A stretch of 64,000 nt of DNA from Octopus sinensis (lineage: Eukaryota): contig NC_043005.1 in the NCBI RefSeq assembly GCF_006345805.1, positions 74,090,001 through 74,154,000 on the forward strand, given 5' to 3'. The position numbers and the translations under genes were made by a program. A model generated the notes under the pieces. The model searched no databases, had not been told where the DNA came from, and saw only the letters and a program-made list of their open reading frames with translations. Below, piece after piece: positions 4,101 to 33,351 of the stretch. The number at the start of each line of letters is the position of its first letter. Within the stretch, counting starts at the first letter, position 1.

Positions 4101-7100
4101 TAGTTGCTGACATTCCAAGTAAACAAGGCCTTTAGAGTGCTATGACTTCTAGGTGTCCTCCTGCAGTTTTTGAAATGTCATCTTTAGTAGGGATTGAACA
4201 AAAAGCTTCAGGTGGTCTTACATCCCTGAACAGTGATGTATATCACTTAGTCACAAAGGCCACTGCAAGAACTTGCATTACTCTTTACTCTTTACTTGTT
4301 TCAGTCATTTGACTGTGGCCATGCTGGAGCACCGCCTTTAGTTGAACAAATCAACCCCAGGACTTATTCTTTGTAAACCTAGTACTTATTCTATCAATAT
4401 CTTTTGCCAAACCACTAAGTTACAGGGATGTAAACACAGCAGCATCAGTGATGATGATGACACACACATATACATACATATATACGATGGGCTTCTTTCA
4501 GTTTCCGTCAACCAAATCAACTCACAAGGCTTTGGTCGGCCCGAGTCTATAGAAGTGCCATGCAGTGGGACTGAACCCGGAACCATGTGGTTGGTAAGGA
4601 AACTACTTACCACACAGCCACTCCTATGCGCTCATAAAATTAATGTGCAAGTGGCTGATCACTCCACAGACACACATAACCTTAACGTTGTTCTTTAGAA
4701 GATTCAGCATGACACAGAATGTGATAAGGCTGGCTCTTTGAAATACAGTTAATTACTCATTTCTACAGCTGAGTGGACTGGAGCAACATGAAATAAAGTG
4801 TCTTGCTCAAGGACACAACACGCTACCAGAAATTGAACTCATGATCTTTTGATCCTCAGCTAAATACCCTAACCACTAAATCATGTCTCTTCACAATTGG
4901 TTGAATATAGAAAACCTGAAAGGTAAGTTTTATGAAACCATGGAGTACTCCTGTCATTCTAATCAGGGCCAGCCCTAGGGTTGCTGGTGCCCTGGGTAAG
5001 CTGAATTTCTGCATGTACAAGCTGACAGTCATGGAAATTTCCTTGTCTTTGTCATGCCCTCCTTGGTGCCCCCTAGCACATGGTGCCTTGGGTGACTGCC
5101 CGAGTTGTCGGTACCTTAAGCCAACCCTGACTAATTAACTATCATATAAAGTAGATTACAAAATACTTTAAAAATTTAAATAATTACTTAATTGCTAAAT
5201 ACCTCAGAGGCAAATTTCATTAAAACCAAGCCAAATTAAATTAATTGTACTAAAATACCATACTATATCATATTTTTCAAAGTGCCTGACTTAAAAGATA
5301 ACTCAAAATTCAAAACTATTATAAATTAAATGAAACAAACCTGTAGCAGCGACACATGTCTCACAACAATCACCTTCAACTTTTTGAAGAGTAAAACCCT
5401 GAATTATTGAAGAAATAAAATAGTTACACAGTTTTAATATAATTTAAATTTAAAGAAAAATATTAGTACACAAACAAAACAATTTGTTTTTATCAAGATA
5501 GAAGGGCAAGTTCTTAAAAAGAAAGAATATACTAGGTTGCTTTGATGAAATATATTACAGTAAAGATTATTTGCCAATATAATGTGGCAGTCCTGGTTAG
5601 GACAAATGTTACTGTTTTTTAGCCCCAGGAAACATTGTCTCTGGCTGGCTATTAACACACTGTCTGTGTCCTTATATTTTTGAACACAAGCGTTTAGTGC
5701 CCCCACTAACTCCCTTGATCAAAAATGTAAGGACGCAGATAGTCTGTAGATAGCCAGCTGAAAATAATGCTTCCTAGGGCTAAATAACAATAACATTCAT
5801 CCTAACCAGGACTGCCACATTATGTTGGCAAATAATCTTTACTCTAGAGTACTGTTACTGAATGTTTCCCGTTCAGAGATTTAAAGATAATAATTTCTCT
5901 ATTTATGAAATACATTACATTTTTTCTAAATTTTTGTGGAGCCCTAAGACTCAAAAATGCCAATTATTCAGTTTCCATGGCATATAAGTGACTGAAATCA
6001 CAACATTATCCCTGAGCAAGGTGCCAGTTTGTTGCAGTGGGAGAGAATTACATTGACCCCTGTTTCTTGAATGATACTTTCTTTTATTGACCACATAGCC
6101 ATCACTCACTAGCTGAAAGAATGAAAAGCAAAGCTGACCGTGGCAGGATTTGAACTCAGAACATAAAGAACGAGAAGAAGACGCTACTAAATATTTTGTT
6201 TGACATGCTAACAATTCTGCCAGCTCACTAATTAGTCATTCGCTGTTATTTATCTTGGCAGTTGTTGAACATTTAGCTGTTTTGCCATAATATTTTTGAT
6301 GAAATATTTTGTTTGTTTAAGGTGGTGAGCTGGCAGAATTGTTAGCACATTGGTCAAATTGCTTTGCAGCATTTCATCTGTCTTTACGTCCTGAGTTCAA
6401 ATTCTTCCCTGGTCAACTTTGCTTTTCATCATTTTTGGGTCGATAAAAGAAGTACCAGTTGAGTACTGGGGTCAATGTCATCAACTTACTCCCTCTCCTG
6501 AAATTTCTGGCCTTGCGCCAAAATTTGAAACCAATATTTTGTGTTTGCTCAATTCATTTGTCTAAGAGAGAAGGTGGCTTAATACCAGGTGTTGAAAGGC
6601 TAAAGTATGATTGAAGGATAAAATAACTTGGTCATAATTAAGCTGGTCTTCAGAACATAAATTAACATAAACTTTTGAGAGAAGGTTTAAATTTAGATCC
6701 CTTTAAAACATGAAGGTTGCAACATAGAACCAGTAAAAGTGTTAAATAAGGCTATTGAAACTAAATAGGGTTAAGAATGTAGTTTGGCATTTTACATAAA
6801 GTCTTCACGGAGTCACATGTAAAAAAGCATGATTAGTTCCAAGACAATTAGAACTCATTATCCAAATGCAAAATGTATAAATAAACACACAAAATATAGG
6901 TTTATACTCACAGGTTTACAAATCAATTCTTTACAATTGTCTGAATGGTTGGTCTTCTGGATTTTGTTTCCAATACAGGCATACTGAACACAGAGTGGAT
7001 CACTGGTATCATTCCAAGATTCATATGGCTAACAAAAAAATATAGGGGTCATCATCACTACATTATCACAAACATCATTATCATTGCCACCCACAATCTT

Positions 7101-8027: not shown

Positions 8028-9068
8028 TAATCTATATTCATTATTCAATGCTATCATAATGTGAATTAAATTATTTTATAGCTAGATCACCTGCAACCTC
8101 AAACTGTGGTCATTTCAGAATACTGTAGCAACAATAATTTATATGTTGCTCTAGTAAGTTTTCAACTCATAACCATATATTCCAGCTTCTTAATTTCATA
8201 GTCATCTTGCCTCATAAAAATAGTCAATTCCATGACACCATAAACAAGTGTCAGTTCAACAAATTGTGGCAACAAAACGTAAGTTTTGCTCTTGTAAATT
8301 TTGAACTCTTAACCATGTGACCTTATACTCAAGGCTCTTAACATTACAGTTATCTTGTTTCATCTATTCTTCCCTACCAGGGCCAGATTAAGAATCACAG
8401 AGGCCCCAAGTACTTAAAAGATTTTGGTACACCAGCATATAAACTATAATAAACCATGAAATAAATTTTCATTTTTCAAAATGAAACGAAACTAACAAAG
8501 ATGGGAAATAATATTTATTTTTGTATACTTCCCTTTTATTTATATTTGAAAAGTTATCTCCTACATTTTTTAATTGTAAAATCTTTGATCAGATCTTCAC
8601 TATGACACCATGACAACACTTTCAAAATTGTATTTCTGATCATATAAACCACTTCAAATATTATTTTAGTAAATTTAAAGTAATTTCTTTTGTGCTGTAA
8701 AACATTTACTATTTCTGTGGTGCCCAACTTTCCTTGATACCCGAAGCACGTGCTTATTTTGCACAATGATTAATCTAGCGTTGTTCTCTATTTACAAAGT
8801 AGTTGATGATTTACAGAACTAACCTTACGAATATTACCAAATTCATCTTGACAATTGCAGTCATTGCTGTCAATACAGACTGTGCCATTGAATGATGTCT
8901 TGTGCCCACATTCACAGCAGTTCTCCTCAGTTTTAGCATAACAGTACGTTCTGTCACTGTGGCAAACCTCTTTTTTCTACAACCGGTGCAACTTTTTGAT
9001 GGGTAGTCATAATTATCTTCATCACATACTTCTGTAAGTAATAAATGACAACATTGTATAGAGAGATG

Positions 9069-9118
<50 letters not shown>

Positions 9119-11170
9119 ATCACGTGATCACGTGACCGACCAGACCATCAGATGTTGTTACACATCGCTGGTCACAATGCGTTCGCATTGTTTTAGCCTT
9201 CGAATGACGCCACCCCGCTGGCTGAGCGAGCAGGCCATATATATATATATATATATATAAGATTAAATAAGGGTAGAAATTGACATTAATCAATTAAAAC
9301 CAGTGGCTTAGCATATTTTTAAAGATCCGAAGATTAAAAATTAAAAATTTTTTTACATTTTTTACATTTTGTTTTTTTGCTGAGATTTTTCTTGAGAACA
9401 CGTTCTTCGTGGTAATGGCAATTTGACATCTATGTTTAGCATATAGGCTGTCCACTTTTAGTGGTCAGTCCTCTAAATTTTGTATGTATATATATATATA
9501 TATATATATATTGGTTTCAAATTTTGGCACAAGGCCAGCAATTTGGGGGTAAGGGGTGTAAGTTGATTACGTCAACCCCCATCACTCAGCCAGTATATAT
9601 TTTATCAACACCAAAAGGCTGAAAAGGAAAGTCAACCTTGGCAAATTTGAACACAGAACATAAAGATAAACGAAATGCTGCTAAGCATTTTGCCTGGTAT
9701 GGTAACCATTCTGCCAGCTCACCACCCTAATATATATATATATATGTACATATATATATATATTATATATATATATGTGTATGTATGTGTATATATATTG
9801 ATGAAAATTATAAGAAATACCTTACAGAAAGTTAAGGAATCAATGCCATGTATGCTCCATTGAAATTTTGCATTACAAGTATGGTCAGCCATCCCTTGTG
9901 TCCAAGTGCTTTCCCTAATTCCTTTAAGTATCTGTATAGTCTTAAACAGAGATGGACACACTCTCAGCCCCAACTCAATTTTGATCCATTGGAATATCTA
10001 GGGTATGATAACTGGAGGGAGAGAGGGTAGAACCAACACCCAGCTCATACTCATTACAACTCGTTACAATAAACAAATACAACAGCTGTGTCACTGAGTT
10101 GAGGGTCCTAAAACTATGTCAGTAATATTAAAACAACATCCACGATTACATATTTCTATCGCATTTGAATCATTAGGCATGCAACAGTCATGTTATAGAT
10201 GTGATCAATATATATGTGTGATCATTATCTTAGTACTATATAAGGTGGTGAGCTGGCAGAATCGTTAGCATGCTGGGCAAAATGCTCAGCAGTATTTCAT
10301 CTGCCGCTACGTTCTGAGTTCAAGTTACGCCGAGGTCGACTTTGCCTTTCATCCTTTTGGGGTCGATTAAATAAGTACCAGTTACGCACTGGGGTCGATG
10401 TAATCAACTAGTCCCTTCCCCAAAAATTTTAAGGCCTTGTGCCTTCAGTAGAAAGGATTATCTGAGTACTATGTCTTGATAAAATGACAAAGTCAATAGG
10501 GGATTAGGTACAAAGCCTTGTGGTAATTTTTACAATTCTATGCAATACAGATTCAATTCCTGCCAACACCAGCTTTGCCTTTCATTTTCCTAGAATCCGT
10601 AAATACAATACCAGTCCAGGACTGATACTGGCAGAATTCATAGAATATAGAATAGATTGCTTTGCAGGAGCTGTCCTGGACCTCTGCATTCTGACAGCAG
10701 AATGGCAAGAATAATGGTACCAAGCTATATCAATCCTTGCTTTTCTCTCAGAGAACACAGGTAGAATGAATAGAAGAGACTAGTAAACATTGGCAATTGC
10801 TGGTCTTTCACAAAATAACCTTGTCTGTGTCGGCATCTTAGAGAAGGATTTTCCAAGTGTAGATCCATAATCCCATGAGATAAACAGAAACCCTGATATA
10901 TAATACAAGATAGTTGAACAGCAGTAGACTGGTAAAGATACCAATTACATACTTAGTAACGTTAAAATCAATGTAGTTTTGTTTGATATCAGAAGGATGT
11001 CAGCTTGCCACTTCCAGAATATTAGAAATATCAGGAAAAAGATAAAGATAAGTTATACTTACGAAATTAGATGATAATAATATAATCAAGCTGATACTTA
11101 CTAGTAGCTGAAATAAAATGAAAATAAAGTTTTATAATGGATTCATTATAATGTGTTTGTTAACAAGGCT

Positions 11171-11228
<58 letters not shown>

Positions 11229-14200
11229 TGCATTTACTTGACAATTGGTGAAATAGCTTTGTCTCTACATGAAGAAGCTAGATGTATGAAAGCTTTGAAG
11301 GTATTGCTTTAGAAGAGTAGCTACTGTTATTTAATTACTTACTGTGTTGAGCTACACCATGAGATATTATCTATGAGTTAGTTAAAGAGTCCATATGGAG
11401 TTTTGTGACCTACTAGAAATAGCAGCCAAATTTCTTTGAAATCACATCCTACTATCCTAAAAGTACAGGGAATAGATGGAATAACATGATCCTTTGAAAT
11501 ACACTTCTGCCTAAAAAAAGACTGGAAAGTCTCATCTGAAAAAACCTTTGATCATAGGTCTGTTGAAGTAGAACTCCTAGGAACTCCTTCTACATGAAAA
11601 CATACAGTTTAGCATCTAGCATACCTAATGCAATGAGTCAAAACATGTTTACCCAATGGAAATTACACCCACAATGAAGAGAAGAATCATCAGAGTTGAT
11701 GATAATTCTTGTTACAAAATGCAAAGGTAATAACTCTGAAATCTTAATTATCCAGAAACTTACTTCATTGACCACATAAATATCACTATTTTATATCAGT
11801 CCTGAGAATGACTTTAAACTGCATCCAGATGTGGGGAACTTAGTTTGGGAGTTCCAGGGATTGAGAAGTGTAAACCACCCTTTAGCCAACATTGTTCCCA
11901 GGTCTAATCTGACATGGTGTAGTAGCACATTTCAGATGCTCTCGGTTTATTAGTACATCACAATATTGACCCTGAAAGAAAGTCGCTCACAGAAAACCCA
12001 ATGGACCCAGAGCAGATAAGTCCCTTCAGCTCTTTAGCTGTTCATCTAAGAAAAGGTAACTCTATACAAATCCTGATTCTTGTTAACTACTAAACTCATG
12101 GCACTTTTTGTGCCAGACTAATATATGTTTAAAGGACAACTGAATGAGATTGGCTCTCCACAAGCCATGCCCAATATAATAATATTCATCACATTAATTG
12201 TTCAGGCACAGGCATGGATGTGTGGTAAGAAGCTTGCTTCCCAACCACATGGTTCTGGGTTCAATCCCACTGGGTGGTATCTTGACCAATTGTTTTTTGC
12301 TATAACCTCAGCCAGACCAAAGCCTTGTGAGTGAATTTCATCGACAGAACCTGAAAGAAGCCTGTAATGTGTGTGTGTGTCTGTGTGTCTATGTTTGTCC
12401 CTCACCACCAGTTAGCAACCAGTATTGGTATGATTATGTCCCTATAACTTAGTACTTCAGCAAAGAGACCAACAGAATAAATACTAGGTTTTGTTCAACT
12501 AGAACTCTTCAAGGTAGTGCCCCAGCATGGTCACAGTCAAATGACTGAAACAAGTAGTATATTGTTGTGATTTTAGTTTTGATCACGTGATTCTGATTGT
12601 CTCGATTGCAGTTATATGCCTGCAGTGTGACTGCACAGTTCCGTTCTGTTTGGGCACGATGTGTTCAGTGTTGATTTTAGTCGAGAATGTAGCAGCTTAC
12701 TGCATAAAAATGTTATTGTGTTGAAGTTTGATTTTGCTTACAATTTAGCAGTCTTTGTTTGTATTGTATATTGCTGTATTTTTAGTCGGTTAAATTGTTA
12801 TAAACCCAAACTTGAATATCAAAGTTTAAAAGGTAACAATTAGAATATAAAATATAAAACCAAAACACCAGCACCAACACCATCACACTTTCTGTATAAG
12901 AAATCTCAGTGGCTGTCTTTTGTTGAAACATCTTTCACAAAGTGATGACAAGTCAACATGGGTCATAGCTTATACCAATGCTAGCAGCCTGCCATTCTAT
13001 TATCTCAGAAACCTGTTTGTTTCAATATACAGTTGTGTTCTACAATAGTTAGATAATCATAATGATATCTTACATAGCCATAAGGCCTGAAATTTGGTGA
13101 GAGGGGAGAACAATCAATGATATCAACTCTTGCACTTTACTGGTACTACTTTTATCAACTCTGGAAGAATGAGAGGCAAAGCTGATCAAAAAAGGTTTTG
13201 AACTCAGAATGTAAAGGGCTTATCACTGAGAAAAAGACAAGATGGTTACAAGTGAATACCTTTGCTCAAAGGTCAGCTTGATCAGGACTGATATGGAGTT
13301 AAACATAAACAGCAGTTTTACAAGAGGGCATTGTAAAGTTCCAGGTTTCAAGTAAAGGAAAATACAAGAGGATCAGCTAATTATTATTTTATTTAACATG
13401 TTCCCCTCTCAGATTCACACACTAGTTGCAGCAGTCCTACAGCTTTTCTAAGCCCTGTAAAAGAACTTGTGAGGTTGAGCTTCCAACCAGGCCTTTCACA
13501 AAACCCTTAACCCTTTCGCTACTGTATTTATTTTGAGATGCTCTGTGTTTCTTTCAATTACTTTAAATATAACAAAGAATTTAGTAAAATAACTTAGTTA
13601 TCATTAAGCTAGTGTTAGGAATGTAAATTGTGACTAAGGCTTGGTGGAAGATTTTAACTCAAAACTTATGAAAACAAGACATTTTACCACATAACCAGAG
13701 CCGGTTTTGGCCAGATTAGTAACAAAAGGGTTAAAGCCTGAAACTTTTCAACACTTCCTTGTATATCTGGCTTTTGAGAATTTAATGTCAGCCATAAATA
13801 CAATGCAATATAAATATTCAAAAGCATTTCGTCCAATACTCTACTGAGCTGCCAATTAAAGATTTGATCATGGAATATACCTATGCTTTTATTTGATGTC
13901 TATGTGACAGCTAAATGCCAGTTGACAGGCAAAAGACAGCAGAAATATATTTATGCAGCAGGTCTTTACTTTCCTTTGAACATGGAACTTGTCATTTCCA
14001 ATGAGAAATGTCTTTTAAACTAAAACCAGAATTTTGGCAAAATGCGGAATAACATCACCAAAAAGCTGGCCAATAAAATTATATATAAACATTTCTAAGA
14101 TTTTCAAGTGAGAACATCAACACAGATCTATCCAGTTAGATTTGTTGTGGATCACACATTATAAAAGAGTAGATTAACAAAGATAGACAGTGTAAAACTC

Positions 14201-16167
14201 AGGAACTTAACAATGTGAGCAGTGAAGCATAACAATGTGCAAATGCTTATATTTGGCAGGGTCTCCACAATTATGACTGTCGAAAGACTTTTTGACATTC
14301 CATTGCTATTTCTTTTCATTGGGCTTTTTGGTCCAACACAAGCTTTTAGTAACAAATATATTGTAGTGGCACAAGCAGTCAGCGCCATATTGGATGAGAT
14401 CTCGCAGCAGCCATTGCCATTTCCAAGACTGGAGCGAGACCTCACTTGCATCCATTTGCGATGGGAAAATGTATATAAGGACAAAACAGATTGAGATTCT
14501 TCCTTCACCTCTTCTTTCCACCTCTTAGCAGCAGCGCTTGCTGAGCACACTCCACTGGCTGAGCCTATCTATATGTTGTACCTCCAAAGGCAATCTGCCC
14601 ACACTAACGGAGCTACTACACAATGCACACAGCTTAAGATGGTTGCTGAGAGCAGCACACTTCACCTATCCTGTGAAATTTGTAAATAAACCAATTGTAA
14701 ATTGCATTTGTACTAGAAGTCTTCTCTTTTCGCCTGCCGGAGCCTGAACTACACGAAGAACAAAATGAGATAATGGAGGAAGGCGATATTCTCCTGATAT
14801 CGTAAACCTTGCCTTCCATTATAATATAATGAAGTGAAAATCAATGATTACTTTTCTCATTCATTCAACATTCTGTTTATCTAATTGTCAAACATCATAA
14901 GATTGTTAGCAACAAAGTTGGTGCTTATCACTTGGTCAACCTTGACTGTACTACTCAATAATCAAAGACATTCCAGCCATAGCCATCTCATTGTCTTTTT
15001 TTCCCTGCCGGAGCCTCCTGAAGTTTTTAAGTGTTTTCGTTCAATAAACACACACAACACCCGGTCTGGGAACCAAAACTGTGATCCTCCGACTGCAAGT
15101 CCGCTTTCCTAACCACTGGGCCATTGCGCCTTCAAGGGAGATTTAAGGGAGGTGTGATTTAAGGGAGATTTAACTGCTATTTTTAGTGGATCAATAAATT
15201 GCATAGATGCTTCCAATTTGGATGGTGGTAGAACAAGGATGCCATTTTACAACTTGCATAATATTTGAAAGATCAGGAAAGGATATAACGAATTTATACT
15301 TACATAGCACATAAGTTAATATTTACACCAAAAGTGATACTTACTGTTATCTGAAATGAAAGAAAGAGGAAAATGCAAGAAATCTTGATAATGTACACCT
15401 CATCATTAATTCATAAAGAAAAATATTGTACACACACACACACGGTTTATAGATAAATCTATTGTTTTATGAATATTATTATTCACAATAGATATTAGGT
15501 ATTGAACCAGTAATTCATTGGATGATACCATCCCTCAATGAGGCTAATTTAACCTCTAATTGAATTTATATATATATGTATATATACATGTGAATAAATA
15601 CACACATACATACACTCAAGCATATAACAAGTTTCTTTCAATTTTGATCCACCAAATCCAGTGTCACGTCTTCTGTCAGCTCAGGACTCTAGTAGAAGAC
15701 ATTTAAGACACTTGCCCAAAGTGCCATGCAGTAAGGCTGAACCTGAAGTCTTGTAGTTACTCTTTTTCTCAGCAAGGAGAAAAAGGCCATTCAGTATCAC
15801 TGATGTTATGCGTCTCCAGTATTTACATTCAAAGGTTCAATTGTACAGCTTGTGGATCAATACAAGTATTGTAAATACCTCACATCAAAATAGCATTTGA
15901 TGTTTGAGGAAATGTAGATATTAAAGAAATATGAAAGAGTCAGTCAATGATAATTCTTAAAAATTTCAGGAATGAGAGAATAAAATTAAGATTTTTAAAT
16001 CATTAATAAAATACAAAATGTATCAGAGTAACAAAATAATAAGAAATACTAACCGCAGTTTTCTAATTCATCAATGCAGTCTGGACAGTCACATCTGTTA
16101 TCACAATTAAATACCTCTGTACATGGCCTTCCTGTAATCATAACATATAATCCATATATATTCACAT

Positions 16168-16213
<46 letters not shown>

Positions 16214-32099: not shown

Positions 32100-33351
32100 A
32101 GGTGTAATGGCCCAGTGGTTAGGGCAGCGGACTCGCGGTCGTAGGATCGTGTTTTCGATTCCCAGACCGGGCGTTGTAAGTGTTTTTTGAGCAAAAACAC
32201 CTAAAGCTCCATGAGGCTCCAGCAGGGTGTGGTGGCAATCTCTGCTGTACTCTTTTACCACAACTTTCTCTCACTCTTTTTTCTGTTGGCCTGCTCGCTT
32301 AGCCAGCAGGGTGGCTCATTTGAAGGCTAAAACAATGTGAAGGGCATTGTGACCAGCAATGTGTAGCATCATCTGATAGCCTGGTCGGTCACGATGATAT
32401 AAAGCAAAATAGCTAGTTCTAAAATCTCAAGAAGAGATCAAAGTAGTAACTATACTAACAAGTAAAGTTAATTGCCAATATCGACATTTTTTCAGCCATC
32501 TTGGAAACGTCTGAATAACTTGTACACTTGTGTGTGGCTCATACACTCCTCCCCATACACTTTCTGCAACTTTGTGGAGGCCTCTGAGCAGGTAATGCCA
32601 TGAGAACTTTCTCTGTCATGGTCAATGCAATGATCACACATTACACACCTTCCTTCCAAGCAGCAGAAGTGAGCTAGAATGTTAAAACTTATTGCACATG
32701 CACAGCAGAGATCAAGAGCAATCTCTGCCAAGTGCCTTCACTCTGCATGTTTTAGCTTCGTGACTATGGCAACAATCCAGATACTTATTGATCAGACCAT
32801 GTATATATATATATATAAATGTTGTAGTTCACTTGAAGCTTTGTAATATCAAAGAATTTAAAAAGGGAGAAAATAGACAGCTTCTGACAATGCGGAAAGT
32901 TTAAAACCTTTATATTTCAGGCACAAAAATCCATCTTCCAAAGAAAAGAACAGTCTAAGAAAAATTCAGTTATGTAGGTTCTGTTAACCATTAAAATTCC
33001 CTAGCATTTATGTCATATATATATATATATGAGATGAGAAAATAGAGAACTAATTAATAAATTATTATTTATTAATTAAAGGATGGACAAACATTCCTTA
33101 CATCTGTTTAAATCCCAGACCTTCAGGAAATTAATTAATTAAATTAAAAATTATTTGAAAGTCGAATTTCTTCAGAGGTAGTTAAAGATATACAAAATAG
33201 GTGTTCAATTCCTGCATGTTGAGTATTAATTGTAATGTTCAATATTCTTTGTATAGGTAACTAACCAGTATTTTTCATAGGATTTTGCTATCTCTGAATG
33301 AAGTTTGTAACGTTTTTTTGTGCTTCTCTCTCTCTCTCTCTCTCTCTCTCG

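What the first reader, a model, noticed from the sequence alone, without database searches (positions are those of the whole stretch)
11102..15350. Two 6-nt microexons, 4.2 kb apart, that together would create an N-glycosylation sequon
Between the LDLa-like exon (ends in phase 1) and the TIL exon (starts in phase 1) are two isolated sites with a long pyrimidine tract, CAG, 6 nt, then GTAAGTATC: ATAACA (15345-15350) and CTACTA (11102-11107). Both are frame-neutral. With both included the junction reads C-D-N-T-T-K-V-C, giving an N-T-T sequon. With only the first it reads D-N-K-V, with only the second A-T-K-V, and with neither E-V, so no sequon forms. Splicing could therefore act as an AND switch for one glycan in the interdomain linker. 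The first microexon has a UGC about 25 nt upstream within the pyrimidine tract, the motif used by Srrm3/4-type eMIC microexon regulation (established in other bilaterians). The splice signals are seen directly; inclusion and glycan switching are inference.
Basis: partly seen in the sequence, partly recalled or inferred. Interest (0 to 1): 0.78.

Follow-up and report, generated by a model that had tools for sequence, protein, structure and literature searches.

The report
Duplicated intronic 6-nt microexon candidates
The two 6-base "microexons" are really in the sequence with textbook splice signals, but they are two copies of one duplicated intronic segment, nothing available shows they are ever spliced into mRNA, and the proposed glycan switch is only codon arithmetic.

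Summary
Both sites exist exactly as described on the minus strand: pyrimidine tract, CAG, 6 nt, GTAAGTATC. The four junction peptides are correct (E-V, D-N-K-V, A-T-K-V, D-N-T-T-K-V). The sites are not independent. They are the cores of two homologous intronic units of about 135-210 nt (about 72% identical, E 4e-11). The units lie 4,243 nt apart in the same orientation, with no third copy in the window. Each unit also has a second perfectly conserved donor (GTAAGTATAA) about 40 nt downstream.

One such in-frame site per window is not unusual (P about 0.2). Retention of all 12 splice-signal positions in both copies is mildly unusual under neutrality (P about 0.02-0.04). That is the only positive hint of function.

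The UGC/eMIC argument fails: the motif is on the wrong side of the pyrimidine tract, absent from site 2, and present by chance at 39% of AGs. Any sequon in this layout is automatically "AND-only", and the protein already has 16 sequons.

One relative shares this intron. It joins the exons directly through a 2-residue linker and has no counterpart of the units. No RNA data or close-species genome could be reached. The downstream exon carries a 1-nt frameshift as assembled.

Verdict: plausible but unproven lineage-restricted microexon candidates (about 0.4). The glycan switch is speculation.

The parts
16054..16131 (-). Upstream LDLa-like exon (…[25 protein letters not shown] + G). It is entered with 2 nt and left in phase 1. 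Donor GCG|gttagtat.
   Evidence: It is collinear with the LDLa-like module of relatives. Pfam itself gives no hit.
15226..15429 (-). Copy 1 of the duplicated intronic unit (best-conserved core 15235-15365).
15351..15377 (-). Site 1 3' splice signal: TGC at 15377-15375, an uninterrupted pyrimidine tract, and CAG at 15353-15351.
15345..15350 (-). Candidate microexon 1, ATAACA. Alone it changes the junction from E to D-N-K.
15336..15344 (-). Donor of site 1, GTAAGTATC.
15294..15303 (-). Second, perfectly conserved donor-like motif GTAAGTATAA, 41 nt downstream of donor 1. Using it would give a 47-nt exon with an in-frame TAA.
10984..11175 (-). Copy 2 of the duplicated intronic unit (core 10993-11123), preceded by a (CA)29 microsatellite.
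11102..11107 (-). Candidate microexon 2, CTACTA. Alone it changes the junction from E to A-T-K.
11093..11101 (-). Donor of site 2, GTAAGTATC.
11053..11062 (-). Second conserved donor-like motif GTAAGTATAA in copy 2. Using it would give a 45-nt exon with an in-frame TAA.
8824..9031 (-). Downstream TIL-like exon. As assembled it is 208 nt and frameshifted at the A6 run 8976-8971. It must enter in phase 1 and leave in phase 0.

Best explanation
An old local duplication inside the 7-kb phase-1 intron produced two copies of a unit of about 135-210 nt. The intron separates the LDLa-like exon from the TIL-like exon of a large secreted VWC/LDLa/TIL repeat protein. Each copy keeps the same cassette: pyrimidine tract, CAG, 6 nt, consensus donor GTAAGTATC, about 40 nt, and a second consensus donor GTAAGTATAA.

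My best guess is that these are genuine, lineage-restricted and probably alternative 6-nt microexons. Each would add two residues to a short interdomain linker: C-EV-C becomes C-DNKV-C, C-ATKV-C or C-DNTTKV-C.

Shown: the signals, the frame, the paralogy, and the skewed mismatch pattern. Inferred: actual use by the spliceosome. Not supported: eMIC/UGC control, and a regulated glycan AND switch.
For: - Exact consensus signals at both sites. Their donors are as strong as the best real donors of this gene.
- All nine GTAAGTAT on the gene strand are either real exon donors (5) or lie in these two units (4). The opposite strand has only 2.
- They are the only strong in-frame, stop-free cassette candidates in the intron.
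- The two units are truly homologous even outside the signals (E 4e-11 and 9e-17; 31/40 matches on the diagonal against a control maximum of 27).
- Within the 28-nt core, none of the 5 mismatches hits the 12 signal positions (P=0.044) and 3 fall in the 6-nt 'exon'. Neutral retention of all 12 positions at 72% identity has P about 0.02.
- The insertion point is a linker that varies from 2 to 11 residues among relatives.
- No rival function was found: no TE proteins, tRNA, Rfam family or shared RNA fold.
Against: - No transcript, annotation or close-species DNA could be obtained.
- A single such site per window is expected by chance about 20% of the time. The finding was selected for being striking.
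- Perfect runs of at least 9 nt are expected about twice in an alignment of this identity.
- The relative that shares this intron (L005) joins the exons directly with a 2-residue linker and has no counterpart.
- Short 1-3-residue linkers are normal elsewhere in this protein.
- Six-nucleotide exons are the hardest class to define. The 3' splice-site architecture is not the SRRM3/4 type.
- The second conserved donor shows that conservation is not specific to the 6-nt exon boundaries.
Confidence: 0.4

Rival explanations
1. Inert pseudo-exons. An ancestral intronic segment (or an old low-copy interspersed repeat) happened to carry juxtaposed splice-site-like motifs and was duplicated. Neither copy contributes to mature mRNA, and the exons join directly as C-E-V-C.
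For: - One in-frame site per window is within chance (P about 0.22).
- The pair is explained by duplication.
- Perfect runs of 9-11 nt are expected at this identity.
- L005 shows that a direct 2-residue junction is the natural state for this intron.
- There is no counterpart in L005.
- Very short linkers are usual in this protein.
Against: - Both GTAAGTAT motifs and the CAG are perfectly retained in both copies, while the sequence between them is about 50% identical with indels.
- Two consensus donors within 45 nt are very unlikely in random sequence of this composition.
- No third copy and no TE hallmarks were found in the window.
Confidence: 0.35
2. A splicing-regulatory intronic element rather than a coding one. 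The conserved 3'ss plus two U1-type sites could act as decoy or poison exons: use of the second donor gives 47-nt or 45-nt exons with in-frame stops, leading to NMD. Alternatively they could act as U1-binding sites that assist or police removal of the long intron.
For: - The second donor is perfectly conserved in both copies.
- Both extended exons contain in-frame TAA.
- The 6-nt 'coding' part is the least conserved part of the core.
Against: - In-frame stops are expected anyway in 45 nt of AT-rich sequence.
- The site is not a zero-length AG|GT recursive site, and no 5'ss is regenerated after the first splice.
- There are no RNA data.
Confidence: 0.12
3. Both microexons are alternatively and independently included under Srrm3/4 (eMIC) control, so that an N-T-T sequon is created and glycosylated only when both are present. 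This would be an AND gate for one glycan.
For: - The arithmetic is right.
- A sequon arises in only 0.7% of random stop-free 6-mer pairs in this context.
Against: - The AND property is forced by geometry.
- The protein already has 16 sequons in 694 aa.
- The UGC is misplaced in site 1, absent in site 2 and uninformative, since it is present at 39% of AGs.
- The model needs four further unverified steps: inclusion of each exon, independent regulation, and glycan occupancy 2 residues from a disulfide-bonded Cys.
Confidence: 0.04

Closest known systems
Frame-preserving microexons (3-27 nt) of bilaterians, including the SRRM3/4 (eMIC)-dependent neural programme
   Same: Length of 6 nt, multiple of three, stop-free. 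Very strong 5' splice site. Conserved intronic flanks (here seen between paralogs). Insertion at a domain boundary or linker.
   Different: Inclusion is not shown. The 3'ss has an AG-proximal uninterrupted Py tract, rather than a distal Py tract and branch point with a UGC between the Py tract and the AG. Site 2 has no UGC. The host is a secreted Cys-rich matrix-type protein. The two candidates are paralogs of each other in one intron.
Intronic pseudo-exons or decoy splice-site pairs, including exonisable repeat-derived segments
   Same: Good 3' and 5' splice-site matches deep in a long intron, present in more than one homologous copy, with no transcript evidence.
   Different: The signals are at full consensus and retained in both diverged copies. 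No TE hallmarks and no further copies were found in 64 kb.
Recursive splice sites / RS-exons of long introns
   Same: Juxtaposed acceptor and donor signals inside a long intron, and strong GTAAGT.
   Different: The acceptor and donor are separated by 6 nt rather than 0. The 6-mers (ATAACA, CTACTA) would not regenerate a 5'ss after ligation to the upstream exon. The intron is only 7 kb.
Host gene: VWC / LDLa / TIL / F5-8C multidomain secreted proteins (SCO-spondin-like, a resemblance from memory only)
   Same: VWC, LDLa and TIL-like modules are detected in the window. Collinear relatives carry an F5/8 type C domain downstream. The phase-1 intron between VWC and the LDLa-like module is conserved.
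   Different: No thrombospondin type-1 repeats or VWD were seen in the window. Family membership was not established.

Membership tests
Microexon (generic) | Exon of at most about 27-30 nt bounded by a functional acceptor and donor | tested here: met
   6 nt between CAG and GTAAGTATC at both sites, with Py fractions 0.94 and 0.82. Met at the level of sequence signals only.
Microexon (generic) | Frame-preserving and stop-free in the host reading frame | tested here: met
   the junctions read ENC-DNK-VC, ENC-ATK-VC and ENC-DNTTK-VC.
Microexon (generic) | Present in mature transcripts (junction reads or cDNA) | not testable with these tools
   No protein or transcript of this gene is in the searchable collections. 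ORF look-ups over both sites found nothing.
Microexon (generic) | Exon and flanking intron conserved in related species | tested here: inconclusive
   The only relative with the same intron (L005, about 50% protein identity, organism unknown) has no counterpart. It is too distant to judge a lineage-restricted exon. The paralog comparison shows the signals retained.
SRRM3/4 (eMIC)-dependent microexon | UGC motif between the Py tract or branch point and the AG, in the bipartite order UCUC…UGC | tested here: not met
   Site 1 has its TGC at -27, upstream of the Py tract that runs to the AG. Site 2 has no TGC within 70 nt. The background rate is 39%.
SRRM3/4 (eMIC)-dependent microexon | Weak 3'ss context with the Py tract and branch point far from the AG | tested here: not met
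   Both sites have AG-proximal Py tracts. Site 2 has a yUnAy branch candidate at -18.
SRRM3/4 (eMIC)-dependent microexon | Neural or endocrine-specific inclusion that depends on the eMIC domain | not testable with these tools
   No expression data are available.
Recursive splice site (ratchet point) | Acceptor AG immediately followed by GTAAGT (zero-length exon), or an RS-exon that regenerates a 5'ss | tested here: not met
   There is a 6-nt spacer. CAGGTAAGT occurs 0 times in the window. The 6-mers do not begin with GT.
Interspersed repeat / transposable element | Multiple dispersed copies, terminal repeats or TSDs, or TE-encoded proteins | tested here: inconclusive
   Only two copies in 64 kb, in the same intron and orientation. 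No TE proteins lie between them. The edges are gradual with no TIR or TSD. Genome-wide copy number is not testable here.
N-glycosylation sequon | N-X-S/T with X not Pro, in a secretory-pathway protein | tested here: met
   N-T-T appears only in the hypothetical +12 isoform. Glycan occupancy is not testable.
Intron-hosted structured RNA (snoRNA or miRNA) | Stable fold shared by both copies, or a match to a curated family | tested here: not met
   Fold z-scores are 0.4, -0.6, 1.6, -0.6 and 0.5 for the homologous parts. Rfam gives no hit near its gathering threshold.

The most novel reading that the evidence does not exclude
The unit is a self-contained, duplicable 'microexon module': 3'ss, 6 nt, 5'ss, about 40 nt, then a second 5'ss. 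The downstream U1 site would supply exon definition for an exon too short to be defined on its own. Duplication of the module would have created two independently includable 6-nt exons, and their joint inclusion writes an N-T-T glycosylation sequon into an interdomain linker.
Probability: 0.04. Interest if true: 0.7.

Novelty: new member of a known kind. Interest (0 to 1): 0.3.

Why it matters
If either 6-mer is spliced in, this would be an example of microexons arising by duplication of an intronic splice cassette. Those microexons would tune the length, and possibly the glycosylation, of a linker between cysteine-rich modules in a secreted protein, which is outside the usual neuronal cytoplasmic targets. 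If they are not spliced in, the case is a useful caution. Two consensus-grade splice-site pairs can look like independent evidence when they are one duplicated sequence. A 'combinatorial' protein feature can also follow trivially from codon geometry.

Tried and rejected
1. LTR-retrotransposon pair: no TE protein domains in ORFs between or around the copies, and no tRNA or primer-binding-like features.
2. The real donor region of exon 16054 as a third copy of the unit: alignment scores of 12.5 and 16 sit within the null of 10 ± 4. Rejected.
3. Relics of duplicated LDLa-like or TIL exons in the intron: none.
4. A hidden Pro/Thr-rich linker exon in the intron: none. The other in-frame candidates have weak donors.
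5. Structured RNA, snoRNA or miRNA: no shared fold and no Rfam hit.
6. Annotated proteins or transcripts of the gene: two searches gave zero hits.
7. Public contigs carrying ORFs over the sites: none.
8. Metagenome scan for closer relatives: only two distant loci from one sample.
9. Tracing the relatives' organisms through accession numbers in the literature: no papers.
10. Thrombospondin repeats, to test the SCO-spondin label: none in the window.
Full report
**What is in the sequence.** The gene runs on the minus strand.
- Site 1 reads …tcttgcattttcctctttctttcatttcag|ATAACA|gtaagtatc, with the 6-mer at 15350-15345.
- Site 2 reads …ctttattttcattttatttcag|CTACTA|gtaagtatc, with the 6-mer at 11107-11102.
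- The upstream exon 16131-16054 encodes …[25 protein letters not shown] and ends with one extra G, so it leaves in phase 1.
- The downstream exon begins at 9031 with AA GTA TGT.
- A TGC lies at -27..-25 of site 1.

The literal observation therefore holds.

**The two sites are one sequence, duplicated.**
- Aligning the flanks shows homology well beyond the splice signals.
- BLAST gives 72% identity over 134 nt for 15365-15235 against 11123-10993, with E 4e-11. With permissive scoring it gives 65.5% over 206 nt, with E 9e-17.
- A profile built from the pair finds no third copy in the 64-kb window.
- The copies are 4,243 nt apart, in the same intron and the same orientation (families D7 and D8).
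- A diagonal-density test shows a core of about 210 nt (15216-15428) far above control offsets, at 31/40 matches against a control maximum of 27. Only marginal islands lie on the same diagonal out to about 16020 and about 14780. This fits an old local duplication that has mostly decayed.
- Each copy also has a second, perfectly conserved consensus donor (GTAAGTATAA) 41 or 39 nt downstream of the first.
- The edges of the homology fade gradually, with no terminal repeats or target-site duplications.

**Is it more than chance?**
- Sites of this kind (Py at least 0.75, AG, 3-30 nt, GTAAGT) are rare. There are three on the gene strand, two of which are the pair, and none on the other strand.
- Simulations that preserve local dinucleotide content give at least one in-frame site in 22% of windows and in 4% of 7-kb introns. 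Two independent sites in the intron would occur in 0.1% of cases, but these two are not independent.
- The informative question is whether a neutral paralog would have kept the signals. In the ungapped 28-nt core, none of the 5 mismatches falls in the 12 signal positions (P=0.044), and 3 fall in the 6-nt 'exon'.
- At the unit's overall identity of 0.72, keeping all 12 signal positions has P about 0.02. However, about two perfect runs of at least 9 nt are expected in such an alignment anyway.
- All nine GTAAGTAT motifs on the gene strand are either donors of real exons (5) or lie in the two units (4). The opposite strand has 2.
- Taken together this is a modest, post-hoc hint of constraint on the splice-type motifs. 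It is not proof.

**Rivals for why the unit exists.**
- ORFs between the copies have no Pfam match. There are no tRNA genes and no Rfam hit near its gathering threshold, so an LTR pair or a known RNA gene is unsupported.
- The units do not fold better than shuffled controls in any way shared by both copies.
- I suspected that the real donor region of exon 16054 was a third copy, but the alignment scores are within the null.
- No relics of the flanking exons lie in the intron.
- Among all in-frame, stop-free cassette candidates in the intron, the two 6-nt sites are much the best, and no hidden linker exon exists.
- Using the second donors would give 47-nt and 45-nt exons that both run into an in-frame TAA. 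A poison-exon or decoy role therefore cannot be excluded.

**The eMIC/UGC argument.** A preprint on SRRM3/4 sensitivity (bioRxiv 10.1101/2024.09.17.613571) describes these microexons as follows:
- a strong 5'ss;
- a Py tract and branch point located far from the AG;
- a bipartite UCUCUC…UGC enhancer, with the UGC between the Py tract and the AG.

Site 1 has the opposite order, with the UGC upstream of a Py tract that runs up to the AG. Site 2 has no UGC within 70 nt. A TGC occurs within 40 nt upstream of 39% of all AGs on this strand. The motif carries no information here.

**The glycan 'AND switch'.** In this layout the first inserted codon starts with the carried-over G, and the last ends in AA. 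Only residue 2 can therefore be Asn, and only residue 4 can be Ser or Thr. Any sequon therefore needs both inserts. In random stop-free 6-mer pairs drawn from the intron, a sequon appears in 0.7% of cases, and every such case is AND-only. The coincidence is mildly notable but was noticed after the fact. The reconstructed 694 aa already hold 16 sequons. Inclusion of each exon, independent regulation and glycan occupancy all remain untested.

**Host gene and relatives.**
- The window's minus strand carries many Cys-rich exons.
- Pfam recognises VWC (exons at about 48.2 kb and 19.0 kb), a canonical LDLa (51.3 kb) and, weakly, TIL (30.9 kb). It does not recognise the two exons flanking the finding. 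No thrombospondin repeats were seen.
- Two protein searches with the gene's own exons gave nothing.
- An exhaustive HMMER search with the in-frame part of the TIL-like exon found two relatives, and a follow-up search found two more.
- Their contigs are genomic. L002 and L001 have a VWC exon that ends …TGT G|gt in phase 1, exactly as in the window. One long exon then encodes the LDLa-like module, the linker, TIL, VWC and further modules through to F5/8 type C.
- In these relatives the linker between the last Cys of the LDLa-like module and the first Cys of TIL is 10-11 residues: KNLPPKPTPQ, SNLPPTTPTPK or SNLPPTPPTPT. The window has E-V, and its 7-kb intron sits exactly at that linker (alignment A2).
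- This first suggested a 'missing' linker. A third relative argues otherwise. L005 is an AT-rich genomic contig with the same phase-1 intron at the same place (about 840 nt). It joins the exons directly as C-T-E-C, a 2-residue linker like the window's C-E-V-C.
- L005's intron has no credible in-frame microexon-like site and no homology to the units.
- The direct junction is therefore a natural state, the linker tolerates 2-11 residues, and the units, if functional, are lineage-restricted.
- Because the two 6-mers are paralogs of each other, their faint resemblance to the relatives' x-N…T-T…K linker is best treated as coincidence.

**A defect in the downstream exon.**
- In the frame set by the upstream exon, 9031-8824 reads [20 protein letters not shown] and then non-Cys sequence. 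The rest of the domain ([23 protein letters not shown]…GNIRK) is in another frame.
- The next exon is 7028-6912 ([18 protein letters not shown]…KP) and starts in phase 0. It continues the relatives' …GDIHA|PGSTWND….
- The TIL-like exon's length must therefore be 2 mod 3. The assembled 208 nt violates this at the A6 run 8976-8971.
- The relatives' spacing C-R-x-x-V-C-H-S favours A4, and A7 would also restore the frame.
- This is either a homopolymer assembly error or a real disruption. It does not change the junction arithmetic, but it matters for any claim about the protein.

**Verdict.**
- The sequence observation is real.
- Treating the two sites as independent is wrong.
- The eMIC and glycan-switch layers are unsupported.
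- The central claim of inclusion in mRNA cannot be tested here.
- Weighing consensus signals retained in both diverged paralogs against a 20% chance baseline, selection bias and no counterpart in L005, I put 'genuine, lineage-restricted, probably alternative 6-nt microexons' at about 0.4. I put inert duplicated pseudo-exons at about 0.35, another splicing-regulatory role at about 0.12, and the full AND-switch model at about 0.04.
- The source species could not be verified.

Noticed in passing
window 8971-8976 (minus strand), within exon 9031-8824: The A6 homopolymer causes a 1-nt frameshift in the TIL-like exon as assembled. The exon must enter in phase 1 and leave in phase 0, but it is 208 nt long. 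The relatives' spacing suggests A4 or A7. This is either an assembly error or a real disruption.
   Followed up: yes
window 6912-7028 (minus strand): There is an additional coding exon ([39 protein letters not shown], the N-terminal half of a VWC domain) between the TIL-like exon and the 5398-5341 exon. It is phase 0 at both ends and collinear with the relatives.
   Followed up: yes
window 18930/16131 boundary; L002 ~693/1314; L005 ~480; L001 ~780: The phase-1 intron between the VWC exon (…C-x-x-C-G|) and the LDLa-like exon is at the same position in the window and in three unidentified relatives. The intron at the LDLa-like/TIL linker is shared only with L005.
   Followed up: partly
window ~15100-15140 (minus strand); plus-strand copies near 32109, 35885, 43292: A tRNA-like SINE head (…GGCGCAATGGCCCAGTGGTTAGG…) is repeated at least four times in the window. 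One copy lies about 90 nt downstream of unit copy 1.
   Followed up: partly
window 34000-33990 (minus strand): A third microexon-like site: ccaacccaag|CAACTACAGTG|gtaagttgt. At 11 nt it is not frame-preserving, and it is unrelated to the two units.
   Followed up: no
window 9072-9120, 16140-16200, 11173-11230, 15430-15443: Dinucleotide microsatellites sit just upstream of several acceptors: (TA)n before exons 9031 and 16131, (CA)29 before site 2 and a short (GT)n before site 1. They may simply reflect the microsatellite richness of this genome.
   Followed up: no
L001-L005 (Logan SRR27386408, ENA ERZ27241800, JGI Ga0081606, Logan ERR12380051): Unnamed eukaryotic genomic contigs in read or metagenome assemblies encode collinear VWC, LDLa-like, TIL, VWC and F5/8C proteins. 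The organisms could not be identified, and no paper cites the four accession numbers searched (SRR27386408, ERZ27241800, Ga0081606, SRR6218665); ERR12380051 (L005) was found later and not searched.
   Followed up: partly
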